64,000 nt of DNA from Saccostrea echinata (taxonomy: Eukaryota). The notes under the pieces were generated by a model. That model did no database searches, was not told the DNA's origin, and was given only the letters and a program-made list of their open reading frames with translations. Numbering within the stretch: position 1 is the stretch's first letter; every line of letters begins with the position of its first letter. Both the position numbers and the translations under genes were made by a program. This document shows positions 6,138 to 41,873 of this stretch, in pieces. The DNA is taken from assembly GCF_033153115.1 (NCBI RefSeq), contig NW_026889800.1, forward strand, positions 5,828,001 through 5,892,000, given 5' to 3'.

Positions 6138-9100
6138 CTTTAACACATTGTTTATCAGCCCTTAAGTATCCATCCTTACATGTACAAGACCAATTTTTAC
6201 CACACATAACATTGTCTTCCATCCCCGCACATTGCTTATCTATCTTACATTGGTCACCAAAATGGATTTTACCTAAAATTTTCAGAAACGAGACATACAT
6301 GTATAATAGCAATTTTCTGACATTTTCTATATCTACCACAGAGTCTATGAAAATGTACCTTCAATGCATCGTCCGTTATATTCGAAGTTTCCAGGTTTGC
6401 AATAACACACTTTTATTTTTCCAAATGCTGTACAAACGTCAGCATCTTCTGTTCCATTACATTGAATATCATACTCACAGGATTCAAATAAATGTCTTTC
6501 CGCTGCAAATGAAATGCTTCATATTATCACAAATTATAAAGTTGTCAAAAACATGCAACTTTGCGAAACATTTTCTCTGCAATGTGTGTGTTAGTTTTTC
6601 ACCAATTGTTTCATTAAATTACGCTTTTATCAATGATAAGTTTTGACATAATGTGTGGGATCTAAATATATGATTATGTTTTGTCCTGTCATGATTGGAA
6701 TATGCTTATAATTTATAATTCTTTAAAAAAGACAGAGAGAAATAATGAAGTAGCATTATCTAAAAAAAAAAAATAAAATAAAAATAAAAAAAAACATTCT
6801 TTGAGCAAGAGCTTTTGACATTAATATTTCTTTAGTATATAATTCATTAATATGTAGAAATTTGTATTTGTGTATATAAGCACTGACTATATGAACAATG
6901 GACACTTTTTAATTTTTTAAGCCTTAAAATTAGTTTGTTTTACTGAATAGGAAAAAGATATTTAAAGAGAATTTTTGTAAAGAAACAATTGAGAGAAATA
7001 AAAAAAACAATTTAAGAAAACTTTGTCCATTGCCAGATGAACGTTGATTGCTGGTAAATATGAACAGTAATTAGAGTCACTGGTAATTCAACAACCCTAC
7101 CCCTTCCACTAAAAACATATTTCATTTATCTATCTTTTATGCATGCAAAATAAAGGGTTACAATCTTTCCGTTCCTGTATAATGTATTAATGTATTTAGT
7201 GGTAAAATTGCAAATCGTGCAATTTTTTTCTATGTTTCATCATATTTATATTATAATAAACAACATAAATATTTCTTTTCATGTTTTCCCCTCAGCCTGA
7301 GAAGAGAAAATAACAAAAGGACAATGGAAAACGAAGAACAAATTTAATTAAATAAATAAATATCATTCGTAAATTGTCATATTATTAAATAAAGAAGCGT
7401 CTTTGTGTAAATATTTGACATTCGTATATATAAAGACTTGCCTTAACAAGAGAAAAATATTTTTAAGACTTGATTTTCATTGTACATTTTAATTGCCATG
7501 TTAAAAAACGATGATTAATCTACCTATAATATACTTTATTCAATAAAATGAGTATTATCATACATCACGTACATAGTATGCACTTTTTCCGATGCCAGAT
7601 AAAAGTGTCATCGCAAGCACAAACGTTTTCTTTCTGTTCTTCGTTAAAACGACAGACTCCAGCGTTTTCTGTACCAGTACACTGCTCATTAATCTTACAT
7701 GAGGCAAATACATGCTTCTTGGCTAAAACAATGAAAATAATATCAAATATCTATATTTCAAAAAGGCATTTCAACCGATAACGAGTGGAAATTCTGTTGT
7801 AAATTATTTTAGTCTCATTTAATATGTAATTTATTATACCTTTCCGACACTTCAGAGTTTTTTTATCTTCTACGAAGTCAGAAGCACACATACAAAGCTT
7901 TCTGTCTCGGACTTTTTTGCAGACCCCCATACCTGCTGTTCCATTGCACTGATCATCTATCAAACAATCCTGGTACAGAGTTTTGTTGACTACAATAAAA
8001 TCTGAAACATTTACTGAGATTTCTCTGAGTACTGCATCAGTAAAACCGATAATCAACAGGCATAAAGGATATATCATTGAATGCAGCATACACATGTACC
8101 TTGTAGACAGTGGGCACCATAACTGATGAATCCAGGGTTACAGACACAGAGTGATTTTTCTGTTTCATTGTCAGGTTTACATTGTCTGGCATTCTTTGTT
8201 CCAGTACATTGTTCATTTGCATAACAAAACTTTCCTATGGCAAGACCGACTGGAATAACAAACCATGGCTTAAATGAATAAATTTGAAGCCAATTATGTA
8301 TATCTTTACTTTTGGTTTAGATTAGCAAAAAGCCTTAGGACATAAGCAACATGAACACCTTTCAAACATGCCCCTCTGATGATGCCATGGCCATATGGAC
8401 AATAACATAGTTTTACTCCATCGACATATCTGCATTCCGTTGCGCCAAATGATCCCCTGCACTGAAGTGAAGACTCACATGGCTCATGTAGACGACGATC
8501 CCCTTTGAAATATAAATAATTATATTCAACAGATCTTATACCCACGAAACTATATGGCCAGTGTTTAAACATGCACATGTATTAATTAAAGTTGAAATGG
8601 AAAATGACTATTATTAGACAAATGCAAGTTTAAGTAGTGTAAATTTAAGGACACCCCATAGTTATTAGACATGAAATTTAAAAAAGAGAAAATTTACTTA
8701 AGTGGATTGGACATTTCTTCATAGAATAAAAAAATAAATAAGTATTTATTAGGCATGAAAGTTAAAAAAAAAGAAGAAAATTTACATGAGTAAATTAGAC
8801 ATTTTCTTTTTTATAGAAATAAAACAATAAATAAGTATCTTAGATACCTTATCATAAAAATACTGAAATAGAGTTATGCCATACATTAAAAATGACGTTT
8901 ACCTTACTCAGGGTTTTAATTGACAGAAACGGATTGCTATAAAGTATAATATCTTAAAATCAGAATTACTCTAAAGGGAAAAATGACAATTAAATATGCG
9001 AATTCTAGTCTTAAAATTTATTTTCGTACTGTTTGAAGAAAAAATGCAACATCTAATAATTTAATCTAAAGTGATGCAGAAGAAATTCGCAAAAAACTCT

Positions 9101-40700: not shown

Positions 40701-41873
40701 AACGAGACTAAGATAAATGGCTTCATTTCATTGAAATGCATTGAACTAAGCAAAGAAATTAAAGAGAATTTTGACATAAATATAGACATTTCTTACGGAT
40801 ACATATTGTCTTTTGAAAATCACTGCGAAGCTGACAGACTTCTCTTTTGTCGTCACATCCATTCCCAAAGGTGCACACTCTTCCAAAATATTCTTAAATG
40901 ATTTAAAAAAAAACATGAAATGTTAGATCTGAAGTACCTTAAAATTAAGAGGTCATGATTCGAATTCGTTATATTATTTTTTCCACAAAGATAACACTAT
41001 CATTTAAAGTACTATTTGTTGAATCCAGTTATTTCAATAACTAGAAAAACAATTATCAATAAGATAAAGTATCAATAAAATAATGAAGTACAGATATACC
41101 TTTTTGTTGGAAACATTTTAGAATTAATTTTACTCTTCGAAAATACAATCGAGTTGTACAGTTATTGAAAGGATTAATTCTAAACGTGTATTCAACATCG
41201 TAGGCGTGGATTGTAGCTATCACATCGTTTATTCGCAAGAATGTGCCAGCTTGCAAATGATGGTTATCGAGGAATAATAGGCAGCTGTAAGTGAAAGTTG
41301 ATGCCTCTCGATCATCAACATCTATAAGATTGGAAAAAAATTGAAATAAAAAAACACGGCTATTCACAAAGTAATAATTATAGTAAACATGGAATTTTGA
41401 TAGTTTAATTAATACCTTCCTTGAAGAAAGACGCAATATTTTGAGAGGAAAATCTACAACTCTGTTTTCCTTTGACGAATGAAATGACACTGTGGTACGG
41501 ATATTCCCTGTTAAATTATCGTAAAATAACACAAATTTCTAAAATCATGAATTCTGACTGAAAAGAAAATGTTTTGTATACTTTAAAAACACAAGATTGA
41601 CAAACTTTTTTTTTAATATGTTAAGTGACCCTTAATAACCGAAGTTAAAAAAATAAAAATAAAATGCCTCCTTTACCCTATGTAATACAAAGAGCCTGAT
41701 TGATGCACCAGCTTTGTCAACCCAAATTCTAGGAAACAGGAAACTAAGAAAAACAAATGAAGTAACTTTATATATATATATTCAAAATGTATTTTTAATT
41801 CATGGTCAACGTTAATTTAACAAGTAATAACCAAAAGCAAATAAAATAATGCCATTTGTTCTTGTTGATTCAT
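28467..41873 (-). CDS. Copy B: multi-exon cysteine-rich (EB/EGF-like repeat) type-I transmembrane receptor with a tyrosine-motif tail; possibly lesioned or pseudogenising
   Basis: Hand-spliced GT-AG exons: 41873-41822 (MNQQEQMALFYLLLVIT, signal-peptide-like), 41743-41677, 41507-41416, 41321-41100, 40892-40797, 40490-40356, 38981-38832, 37925-37782, 37134-36985, 36885-36736, 36615-36466, 32526-32383, 32257-32123, 31034-30891, 30385-30251, 30128-30000, 29876-29815 (putative), 29742-29716, 29530-29413 (TM), 29320-29236, 29160-29030 (putative), 28718-28467 (stop). Module exons are 129-150 nt, phase 1-1, with the pattern C-x5-C..C..CxC..C (e.g. LYEPCESSDQCTGSRGARECRPMEGVKLCYCPDGYGIFGGSCLK). Confidence 0.85.
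28831..28965. repeat. Imperfect palindrome in the last intron of copy B
   Basis: TTCTTTGGTTGTTATTATGAGAATTAATGTTGCAGCT...AGCTGCAAAGTTAATTTTCATACTAACAAACAAAGAA. Confidence 0.65.
29413..29530 (-). CDS. Transmembrane exon of receptor copy B
   Basis: ttcag|AT...AG|gtattt; translates DKKNP-LLVLVGTGGSLFVIFISTITCLIVC-RRKWKSQNER, a hydrophobic stretch followed by a basic stop-transfer segment. Confidence 0.8.
31364..31770 (-). mobile_element. Penelope-like 3' fragment in intron 13 of copy B
   Basis: ORF 31566-31775 (KRGKLLTNKLTKQGY...GRYNDLV) plus the 3' UTR. Confidence 0.85.
33326..33912. mobile_element. TIR element with an internal palindrome, in intron 11 of copy B
   Basis: AAAGAGCTAGGTTCACTT ... 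AAGTGAACCTTGTTCTTT; internal AGCGCAACCTCTGATCTAAAA / TTTTAGATCAGAGGTTGCGCT (33568-33663). Confidence 0.6.
37988..38063. repeat. 27-bp tandem repeat, about 3 copies
   Basis: Unit ATAGAACGTTTGCGTATACAGTACAAT. Confidence 0.85.
38357..38675. repeat. Palindromic Crypton-like non-autonomous element
   Basis: ~50-bp inverted arms (38357-38475) around CCGAGCCTTGGCGAGG, with a second inverted pair at ~38486 and ~38660. Confidence 0.6.

What the first reader, a model, noticed from the sequence alone, without database searches (positions are those of the whole stretch)
6138..41873. Tandem cluster of modular Cys-repeat receptors with an unrecognised N-terminal domain and a tyrosine-motif tail: candidate invertebrate immune or recognition receptor family
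Seen: two paralogs ~29 kb apart with identical lengths and phases for exons 2-13. Copy B has a signal peptide, a ~125-aa domain (exons 2-4, GEYPYHSVISFVKGKQSC...YSCLLFLDN...INPFNNCTT...LKCFQQK), one 4-Cys and 11 six-Cys modules, a TM helix and a Tyr-rich tail. Established: bivalves carry expanded EGF/EB-repeat receptor families that are often auto-annotated as MEGF or CED-1-like without functional data. Inference: a variable distal domain on a repeat stalk with a phospho-Tyr tail is the layout of a diversified recognition receptor.
Basis: partly seen in the sequence, partly recalled or inferred. Interest (0 to 1): 0.8.

Follow-up and report, generated by a model that had tools for sequence, protein, structure and literature searches.

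The report
Oyster EB-repeat receptor gene cluster
The window holds two of at least seven related genes on one contig of an oyster-like genome; each appears to encode a membrane receptor with an unknown outer domain on a stalk of small cysteine-knot modules and a tail with three conserved tyrosines, and nothing yet shows what it binds or that it serves immunity.

Summary
On the minus strand, copy A (window 12370-6138) and copy B (41873-28467) share exons 2-13, with equal lengths, phases and AG/GT ends in 12 of 12 pairs. Copy B has a signal-like exon, a ~125-aa domain, one 4-Cys module, eleven 6-Cys modules, a TM helix and a Tyr tail. The N gap lies in intron 5 of copy A.

Additions:
- The cluster has four tandem copies with one 19-exon plan. 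Copy A's exons 14-19 lie just outside the window.
- Three or four more diverged loci lie on the same contig.
- The outer domain has no Pfam, PDB-sequence or Atlas match. Among 1.84 billion representative proteins it hits only two clusters, one from the oyster Saccostrea cucullata.
- Three tail tyrosines are invariant across six paralogs.
- dN/dS is below 1 in every block tested except exons 14-16, where it nears 1 against copies C and D on few changes. The outer domain changes faster than the stalk.
- The 3' third is homogenised between copies.
- Three of the four tandem copies carry apparent lesions, including a TGA in B exon 11.

I class it as a new variant of a known kind. The scan's earlier notes concern this same window only.

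The parts
41822..41873 (-). Copy B exon 1 (tentative): ATG plus a hydrophobic signal-like peptide, with a phase-1 donor
41677..41743 (-). Copy B exon 2 (67 nt): end of the signal region and start of the N-terminal domain
   Evidence: collinear with Saccostrea P0001
41416..41507 (-). Copy B exon 3 (92 nt): N-terminal domain
41100..41321 (-). Copy B exon 4 (222 nt): core of the orphan N-terminal domain, with no Pfam match
40797..40892 (-). Copy B exon 5 (96 nt): 4-Cys module. Its counterpart is present in Saccostrea isoform X1 and skipped in X2
40356..40490 (-). Copy B exon 6: six-Cys module 1 (EB 22.4 bits, EGF 22.6 bits)
38832..38981 (-). Copy B exon 7: six-Cys module 2 (EB 24.4 bits)
37782..37925 (-). 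Copy B exon 8: six-Cys module 3
36985..37134 (-). Copy B exon 9: six-Cys module 4
36736..36885 (-). Copy B exon 10: six-Cys module 5
36466..36615 (-). Copy B exon 11: six-Cys module 6, with an in-frame TGA at 36490-36488 (TGG in copies A, C and D). The exon is 150 nt, phase 1-1
32383..32526 (-). Copy B exon 12: six-Cys module 7 (EB 28.3 bits)
32123..32257 (-). Copy B exon 13: six-Cys module 8 (EB 27.7 bits)
30891..31034 (-). Copy B exon 14: six-Cys module 9
30251..30385 (-). Copy B exon 15: six-Cys module 10 (135 of 135 nt identical to copy C)
30000..30128 (-). Copy B exon 16: six-Cys module 11 (EB 32.5 bits)
29413..29530 (-). Copy B exon 17: transmembrane helix followed by a basic stop-transfer stretch
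29236..29320 (-). Copy B exon 18: cytoplasmic, with two Tyr
28467..28718 (-). Copy B exon 19: cytoplasmic tail with five Tyr, three of them invariant in six paralogs; ends in a stop codon
12534..12588 (-). Copy A exon 1 (tentative)
12304..12370 (-). Copy A exon 2
12040..12131 (-). Copy A exon 3
11727..11948 (-). Copy A exon 4: core of the N-terminal domain
11075..11170 (-). Copy A exon 5: 4-Cys module
10700..10851 (.). Assembly gap, inside intron 5 of copy A
10399..10533 (-). Copy A exon 6: six-Cys module 1
9866..10015 (-). Copy A exon 7: six-Cys module 2
8359..8502 (-). Copy A exon 8: six-Cys module 3
8100..8249 (-). Copy A exon 9: six-Cys module 4
7840..7989 (-). Copy A exon 10: six-Cys module 5
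7573..7722 (-). Copy A exon 11: six-Cys module 6, intact (EB 20.4 bits)
6359..6502 (-). Copy A exon 12: six-Cys module 7
6138..6272 (-). Copy A exon 13: six-Cys module 8. Exons 14-19 of this copy lie outside the window, to the left

Best explanation
The window holds two members (A and B) of a tandem set of four paralogous genes (D, C, A, B over about 100 kb, all on the minus strand). Three or four more diverged members lie on the same contig.

Each gene encodes a type I membrane protein. It has a short signal-like peptide and a ~125-aa, probably beta-rich, N-terminal domain with no known relatives outside oysters. In the four tandem copies a 4-Cys module follows, then a stalk of 4 to 11 six-Cys EB/EGF-like modules, each on its own phase 1-1 exon. 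One transmembrane helix and a cytoplasmic tail of about 120 aa complete it.

Inferred mechanism: the distal orphan domain binds a ligand and the disulphide-rich modules hold it away from the membrane. The three invariant tail tyrosines, one in a Y-x-Y-N-[H/R]-L-H motif and one in an N-[L/I]-Y-D-V-[S/T]-[E/D] motif, are phosphorylated and recruit SH2-type adaptors.

The family evolves by tandem duplication. The ectodomain-distal part diverges under weakened purifying selection, while the 3' third (modules 9-11, TM and tail) is kept alike by gene conversion or unequal crossing-over. Individual copies decay: lesions are seen in B, A and D, and copy C looks intact.

Shown: the gene structure, the family, the conservation pattern and the lack of known relatives. 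Inferred: membrane topology in vivo, ligand binding, tyrosine phosphorylation and any immune role.
For: - Exon plan: 12 of 12 exon pairs of A and B agree in length, phase and splice ends. Four full 19-exon sets lie in tandem.
- Independent support for the junctions of exons 2 to 6: RefSeq models of Saccostrea cucullata (P0001, P0006) are collinear with exons 2, 3, 4, (5) and 6.
- Modules: EB (PF01683) is the best Pfam family for 9 of the 10 copy-B module exons scanned; for exon 6, EGF scores marginally higher. EB is over the 24.3-bit cut-off in 4 of the 10. Every one of exons 6-16 has six Cys, and there are 13 N-glycosylation sequons in the ectodomain exons.
- TM helix plus a basic stretch.
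- Orphan domain: no Pfam match, nothing below E 0.48 among PDB sequences, no Atlas hit, and 2 clusters among 1.84 billion representatives. It occupies 7 loci in its own genome, all on contig C51 and on the minus strand.
- Tail: 8 loci. Y18, Y52 and Y69 are among only 10 invariant columns in six tails that share 32-36% identity with copy B.
- Selection: dN/dS is 0.18-0.55 for the domain and 0.28-0.49 for exons 6-13. Both are below 1 for B against A (Fisher p 0.016 and 1.5e-15).
- 3' homogenisation: dS between B and the others is 0.6-0.7 in exons 2-13 but 0.04-0.24 in exons 14-19. B and C are 89-92.5% identical through the introns over window 28236-31762.
Against:
- Three of the four tandem copies carry apparent lesions. 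B has a TGA in exon 11. A has a 1-nt loss in an A-run of exon 15, a 1-nt gain in a G-run of exon 16 and an exon 18 donor reading AT. D has a 4-nt insertion before the exon 15 donor. The assembly could not be checked against reads.
- For exons 14-16, dN/dS is near 1 against C and D (12-13 nonsynonymous against 3-4 synonymous changes).
- Exon 1 is tentative. The hydrophobic core is short in copy C and no exon 1 was found for copy D.
- The Saccostrea models are only 224-256 aa and end after two modules, with no TM. A secreted form or a truncated prediction is possible there.
- Two AlphaFold runs gave a mean pLDDT of 46 and 45, so the fold of the domain is unknown.
- The tail has no NPxY, ITIM or ITAM pattern and only one YxxL (read directly).
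Confidence: 0.55

Rival explanations
1. A diversified immune or non-self recognition receptor family. The distal domain would be under diversifying selection to follow pathogen or allogeneic ligands, and the genes would be expressed in haemocytes and induced by challenge.
For: - The distal domain is the most diverged part: 23-49% identity between paralogs.
- Its nonsynonymous change exceeds that of the stalk, 26.5% against 18.5% of sites (p 0.0045), at equal synonymous change (p 0.59).
- Exon 3 alone shows 15 nonsynonymous against 2 synonymous changes.
- Tandem birth-and-death with pseudogene-like copies and conserved Tyr motifs in the tail are common in immune receptor families (general knowledge).
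Against: - dN/dS for the whole domain is 0.18-0.55 and significantly below 1 for B against A.
- Copies A, C and D are nearly the same in the domain (dN 0.016-0.08).
- Only 7 loci carry the domain.
- No ITIM or ITAM pattern, and no recognised lectin, Ig, C1q or FBG domain.
- No expression data of any kind. The paper searches gave only general listings of MEGF10-named oyster transcripts (listing and abstract starts only).
Confidence: 0.2
2. A decaying cluster. The copies in the window are pseudogenes left by a recent burst of duplication, and they make no functional receptor.
For: - B has a premature TGA in exon 11.
- A has two frameshifts and a lost donor in its 3' exons, and D has a 4-nt insertion at the exon 15 donor.
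- Transposon fragments fill the long introns and the spacers.
- dN/dS is near 1 in exons 14-16 for B against C and D, and for C against D.
Against: - All other exons are open, with AG/GT ends, in all four copies, and copy C shows no lesion.
- dN/dS is well below 1 over exons 2-13 and 17-19 in every pair, so any loss of function is recent.
- Two of A's lesions are single-base changes in homopolymer runs and could be assembly errors.
- B's stop lies in a 150-nt phase 1-1 exon whose skipping would keep the frame.
Confidence: 0.2
3. A non-immune adhesion or matrix protein family, for example in cell-cell adhesion, development or shell and mantle biology. It would use the EB/EGF stalk structurally, and in some species it would be secreted.
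For: - EGF-like repeat proteins serve many non-immune roles in molluscs, including shell matrix proteins (PMC9290575, seen in the search listing and abstract start only).
- The Saccostrea models lack a TM.
- The genome has at least 58 EB-type exon matches in several clusters, so the module is in general use.
Against: - TM and tail exons are conserved in the four tandem copies and in G, and the tail exon also in E; the motifs include invariant tyrosines, which points to signalling rather than a purely structural role.
- No ZP, VWA or other matrix domain was found in the exons scanned.
Confidence: 0.15

Closest known systems
Saccostrea cucullata LOC134269873 and LOC134281177 (XP_062608046.1, XP_062619630.1; 'uncharacterized protein')
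   Same: These are the only named relatives of the N-terminal domain (profile E 2.1e-17). They show the same order of exon 2, 3, 4, (5) and 6 equivalents, and the 4-Cys module is present in isoform X1 and skipped in X2.
   Different: They share 42-57% identity with the exon translations of the four tandem copies. The models are 224-256 aa, stop after two modules and have no TM or tail. No function is known.
EB module proteins (Pfam PF01683)
   Same: EB is the best Pfam match for 9 of the 10 copy-B module exons scanned, and for exon 11 of copy A. It is over the cut-off in 4. The same module type gives at least 58 exon matches in this genome.
   Different: Only profile positions 16-52 of 52 are matched (20-52 at the narrowest). 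Each module has six Cys, where the Pfam description (recalled) gives eight. EB has no assigned function, so the match names a fold type and not a mechanism.
CED-1 / Draper / MEGF10 engulfment receptors
   Same: They are also type I proteins with a distal domain, many EGF-type repeats, one TM helix and a tail with tyrosine motifs. One YxxL is present here.
   Different: There is no EMI domain. The repeats match EB rather than laminin-type or hEGF models. There is no NPxY in the tail. The features of this family are recalled, not taken from a call.
Nimrod / Eater phagocytosis receptors of insects
   Same: They work alike in layout: a ligand-binding N-terminal part on a long stalk of EGF-like repeats, a TM helix and tandemly clustered genes (recalled knowledge).
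   Different: The NIM repeat signature (CxPxC..., recalled) is absent from the modules read. The tail here is longer and has conserved Tyr motifs.

Membership tests
CED-1/Draper/MEGF10 | N-terminal EMI domain | tested here: not met
   Pfam scans of exon 4 of A and B, and of the Saccostrea homologues that cover exons 2-4, gave no family for the N-terminal part at E up to 1.
CED-1/Draper/MEGF10 | Repeats of the laminin-type or atypical EGF kind | tested here: not met
   EB is the top family in 9 of the 10 copy-B module exons. EGF (PF00008) passes its cut-off only in exon 6, and hEGF scores 13.3 bits against a cut-off of 29.3.
CED-1/Draper/MEGF10 | Single TM helix | tested here: met
   Exon 17 encodes about 24 hydrophobic residues followed by a basic stretch. 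This was read from the sequence; no TM predictor was run.
CED-1/Draper/MEGF10 | NPxY and YxxL motifs in the tail | tested here: not met
   There is no NPxY in the exon 17-19 translations. One YxxL (YNHL) is present (read directly).
EB module (PF01683) | Score over Pfam's gathering cut-off of 24.3 bits | tested here: inconclusive
   Four of the 10 copy-B module exons pass (24.4, 28.3, 27.7 and 32.5 bits); the other six score 19.0-22.4. Exon 11 of B was not scanned because of its stop, and A's exon 11 scores 20.4. The exons were scanned singly and the joined protein was not scanned.
EB module (PF01683) | Full 52-position module with eight Cys (Cys number recalled from the Pfam description) | tested here: not met
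   All matches cover profile positions 16-52 at most (20-52 at the narrowest), and each exon has six Cys.
Nimrod/Eater (NIM repeats) | NIM signature beginning CxPxC (recalled) | tested here: not met
   No module translation has CxPxC. The first two Cys are 5 residues apart, without Pro at that place.
ITIM/ITAM-bearing immune receptors | [SIVL]xYxx[ILV], or two Yxx[LI] spaced 6-12 residues apart (recalled consensus) | tested here: not met
   Of the seven Tyr in B's tail, only YNHL fits Yxx[LI], and its -2 position is Tyr (read directly).
Oyster family defined by the orphan N-terminal domain (Saccostrea LOC134269873-like) | Significant match to the exon 4 domain, with collinear flanking exons | tested here: met
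   E 2.1e-17 over profile positions 1-72. Exons 2, 3, 4 and 6 align in order. In the window's own genome, 7 loci match at E from 8e-33 to 4e-8.

The most novel reading that the evidence does not exclude
The ~125-aa N-terminal domain is a new ligand-binding fold that defines an oyster-restricted family of tyrosine-signalling surface receptors. The distal domain diversifies between paralogs (down to 23% identity) while the tail motifs Y-x-Y-N-[H/R]-L-H and N-[L/I]-Y-D-V-[S/T]-[E/D] stay fixed. The 3' signalling half is kept uniform by gene conversion, and copies are gained and lost quickly. That would be a lineage-specific non-self recognition system.
Probability: 0.2. Interest if true: 0.6.

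Novelty: new variant of a known kind. Interest (0 to 1): 0.38.

Why it matters
Bivalves rely on innate recognition and carry many lineage-specific receptor families, most of them auto-named MEGF10-like or left 'uncharacterized'. This family is small enough to study as a whole. It combines a domain with no known relatives, a clear modular exon plan, a conserved pair of tyrosine motifs that gives a testable signalling handle, and a sharp boundary between a diverging 5' part and a homogenised 3' part. If the domain binds microbial or allogeneic ligands, it would add a new recognition fold. If not, it is still a clean case of mosaic concerted evolution in a tandem receptor cluster.

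Tried and rejected
- **Structure.** Two AlphaFold2 runs used the Saccostrea homologue P0001, with the exon translations as fragment rows. Mean pLDDT was 46.4 and 44.8 and the N-terminal domain scored below about 60 throughout. Only four strands in the exon 4 part recurred in both models. I ran no fold search, because a model of this quality gives meaningless matches.
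- **Remote homology.** The ESM Atlas gave no usable hit. A PDB sequence-profile search gave nothing below E 0.48. Pfam gave nothing for the domain, the 4-Cys exon or the tail.
- **More homologues.** The search for homologous proteins on residues 14-140 of P0001 found only the two Saccostrea isoforms (2 of 26 candidates). Its length window of 123-392 aa cannot see full-length receptors. The wider profile A4 was therefore never run against public proteins, because the one representative search had already been used on the narrower profile A1.
- **Possible extra tail exon.** I considered one in intron 18 of copy B (open frame 29278-29000) and rejected it. Its open frame does not fit the phase-0 junction of exons 18 and 19, and copies A and D have indels there that are not multiples of three.
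- **False alarm in copy D.** An apparent frameshift in exon 9 came from extrapolating a gapped blastn hit. The alignment and tblastn show no indel.
It speaks of three lesions in copy B. I find one, the TGA in exon 11. My exon model shows no other stop or frameshift in B.
- **Papers.** 'EB module' with 'oyster' found 0 papers. 'MEGF10', 'oyster' and 'hemocytes' found 8 papers, 7 listed. A four-term search on EGF-like, bivalve, gene family expansion and phagocytosis receptor found 16, with 12 listed. I saw only the listings and abstract starts. None describes this family. I read no paper and opened no supplements.
- **Organism.** It was not identified. The only named relatives come from an oyster.

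Full report
**What is in the window**

A scan of all six frames for a six-Cys pattern found 18 open segments. All are on the minus strand and fall in two groups, 8 at 6061-10561 and 10 at 29995-40542, with none elsewhere. blastn of the two regions gives 8 collinear blocks at 66-79% identity.

I chose acceptor and donor pairs that fit both copies, and aligned the 5' parts base by base. This gives exons 2-13 with the same length, phase and AG/GT ends in 12 of 12 pairs (exon 5 of copy A was corrected).

Copy B continues with three more six-Cys exons, a TM exon and two tail exons that end in a stop at 28467. The frame is kept across every junction. Its ATG at 41873 opens a hydrophobic exon 1 with a phase-1 donor. 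Exons 6-16 each have six Cys and exon 5 has four. The ectodomain exons hold 13 N-glycosylation sequons.

**The gap**

The N run at 10700-10851 lies in intron 5 of copy A, between exon 5 (11170-11075) and exon 6 (10533-10399). No frame crosses it.

The 301 bases on the exon 6 side match the same intron of copy C at 96% over their full length. The first 183 bases on the exon 5 side match at 90%. Order and orientation are the same. Copies B and C have no exon between exons 5 and 6. This fits continuity, but it is not proof. I printed coordinates only and looked up no letters for the gap.

**The cluster is larger than the window**

- The exon 4 translation matches four places in the genome. All are on contig C51, on the minus strand, within 81 kb.
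- tblastn of B's exons against 60 kb fetched to the left of the window shows four full sets of exons 3-19 in tandem, in the order D, C, A, B. Exon 2 was located.
- Copy A's exons 14-19 lie 0.6-4.3 kb beyond the window's left edge, so copy A is not truncated.
- A profile of the four copies found weaker matches. A second profile that included them found 7 loci (E 8e-33 to 4e-8), all on C51 and on the minus strand: D, C, A, B, F, E and G.
- Gene E has exon 3-like and exon 4-like pieces with the same phase-1 donors, eight six-Cys exons and a related tail exon.
- Gene G has the domain, at least four six-Cys exons, a TM-like exon and a related tail.
- Gene F has the domain and six module exons, and a weak tail match lies about 15 kb further on.
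- A tail profile finds 8 loci. One of them, at 6.918 Mb, has an EB exon nearby but no domain match at E up to 1.

**What the parts are**

EB (PF01683) is the best Pfam family for 9 of the 10 copy-B module exons scanned; for exon 6, EGF scores marginally higher (22.6 against 22.4 bits). EB is also the best family for exon 11 of copy A. It always covers profile positions 16-52 at most, 20-52 at the narrowest. It is over the 24.3-bit cut-off in four B exons, and the other six score 19.0-22.4. The genome has at least 58 such exon matches in several clusters, which is a lower bound.

The N-terminal domain, the 4-Cys exon and the tail have no Pfam family.

**Relatives of the N-terminal domain**

The exon 4 profile, run against 1.84 billion representative proteins, found two clusters. 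One is from the oyster Saccostrea cucullata (E 2.1e-17, 'uncharacterized protein LOC134269873'). The other is a set of unnamed short fragments from Logan assemblies (E 1e-4).

A second search limited to proteins of 123-392 aa added only the other isoform of the Saccostrea gene.

The Saccostrea models align exon by exon with exons 2, 3, 4 and 6. Isoform X1 also carries the equivalent of exon 5, which isoform X2 skips. This is the only outside support for the splice junctions. How those models were built is not known to me.

PDB sequences gave nothing below E 0.48 and the Atlas gave no hit. Two AlphaFold runs gave pLDDT 46 and 45, with four recurring strands in the exon 4 part and nothing confident. 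So 'unrecognised domain' stands, and the fold is unknown.

**The tail**

B's cytoplasmic part has seven Tyr, and all seven are kept in copies A, C and D.

I aligned the last exon of six paralogs; E and G share 36% and 32% identity with B. Only 10 columns are invariant, and three of them are Tyr. One sits in Y-x-Y-N-[H/R]-L-H and one in N-[L/I]-Y-D-V-[S/T]-[E/D].

There is no NPxY and no ITIM or ITAM pattern. One YxxL is present, and it overlaps a YxN. The consensus patterns are recalled, and the reading is direct.

That the tyrosines are phosphorylated and dock SH2 adaptors is inference.

**How the copies evolve**

Nei-Gojobori counts were made per exon and added as numbers.

| Block | Comparison | dS | dN/dS |
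|---|---|---|---|
| Exons 2-4 (domain) | B against A, C, D | about 0.6 | 0.51-0.55 |
| Exons 2-4 (domain) | among A, C, D | 0.09-0.28 | 0.18-0.29 |
| Exons 6-13 | B against A, C, D | 0.70 | 0.28-0.30 |
| Exons 6-13 | among A, C, D | 0.11-0.12 | 0.33-0.49 |
| Exons 14-19 | B against A, C, D | 0.04-0.19 | about 1 for exons 14-16 against C and D, on 3-4 synonymous changes; 0.34-0.36 for exons 17-19 |

- For B against A, both the domain and the stalk are below 1 (p 0.016 and 1.5e-15).
- The domain has more nonsynonymous change than the stalk (p 0.0045) at equal synonymous change (p 0.59).
- Exon 3 alone has 15 nonsynonymous and 2 synonymous changes.
- B and C are 89-92.5% identical through the introns over window 28236-31762. 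Further 5' they align only around exons, at 68-80%.
- The 3' third has therefore been homogenised, while the 5' two thirds keep an older divergence.

**Lesions**

- B exon 11 has TGA where the other three copies have TGG.
- Copy A, outside the window, has a one-base loss in an A-run of exon 15, a one-base gain in a G-run of exon 16, and AT in place of the exon 18 donor GT.
- Copy D has four extra bases just before the exon 15 donor.
- Copy C shows none.

The low dN/dS means these lesions are recent, if they are real. I could not check them against reads. B's stop lies in a 150-nt phase 1-1 exon, so skipping it would keep the frame. Of the three lesions that note mentions, I find only this one.

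**What could not be done**

There is therefore no read evidence for splicing, expression or the lesions.
- The two runs listed held 9% and 5% of the sampled words, and their kind was only guessed.
- No supplements were opened and no paper was read beyond the listings.

**Verdict**

The window holds two members of a real gene family that is restricted, so far as these searches show, to oysters. The family comprises type I EB-repeat membrane proteins with an orphan distal domain and conserved tail tyrosines. It evolves by tandem duplication, 3' homogenisation and loss of copies.

The immune reading is a reasonable guess from the layout, but nothing here tests it. The family is small and is under purifying selection. 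I class it as a new variant of a known kind, of moderate interest.

Noticed in passing
   Followed up: no
window 16523-17399: A run of similar short open frames on the plus strand, all ending in the same peptide, suggests a minisatellite with a period of roughly 70-220 bases.
   Followed up: no
window 13393-13638, 45370-45711, 57122-57484, 61790-62293; also L018 around G000:C51:5965516-5965995: Near-identical fragments of one repeat family occur on both strands. They carry a reverse-transcriptase-like FRYIDD motif followed by a conserved C-terminal part. The family fills the introns and spacers of the cluster.
   Followed up: no
window 12040-12131 and 41416-41507 (exon 3 of both copies): All three reading frames of this 92-nt exon are open in both copies. 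Its synonymous divergence (2 changes in 17.7 sites) is far lower than in exon 4 next to it. This may reflect a separate conversion tract or a constraint at the DNA level; it is unexplained.
   Followed up: partly
G000:C51:5897995-5898102 (outside the window, locus L016): A lone EB-like exon lies about 3 kb from a weak tail match at 5895044-5895199. It may be the 3' end of gene F or a stray fragment.
   Followed up: partly
G000:C51:5778961-5787773 (outside the window): Intron 5 of copy D is about 8.8 kb, against 0.3-0.5 kb in copies B, C and A, so it probably holds an insertion.
   Followed up: no
window 48748-48890, 50212-50365, 63286-63527: Three further N runs lie in the repeat-rich right part of the window, outside the genes.
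   Followed up: no
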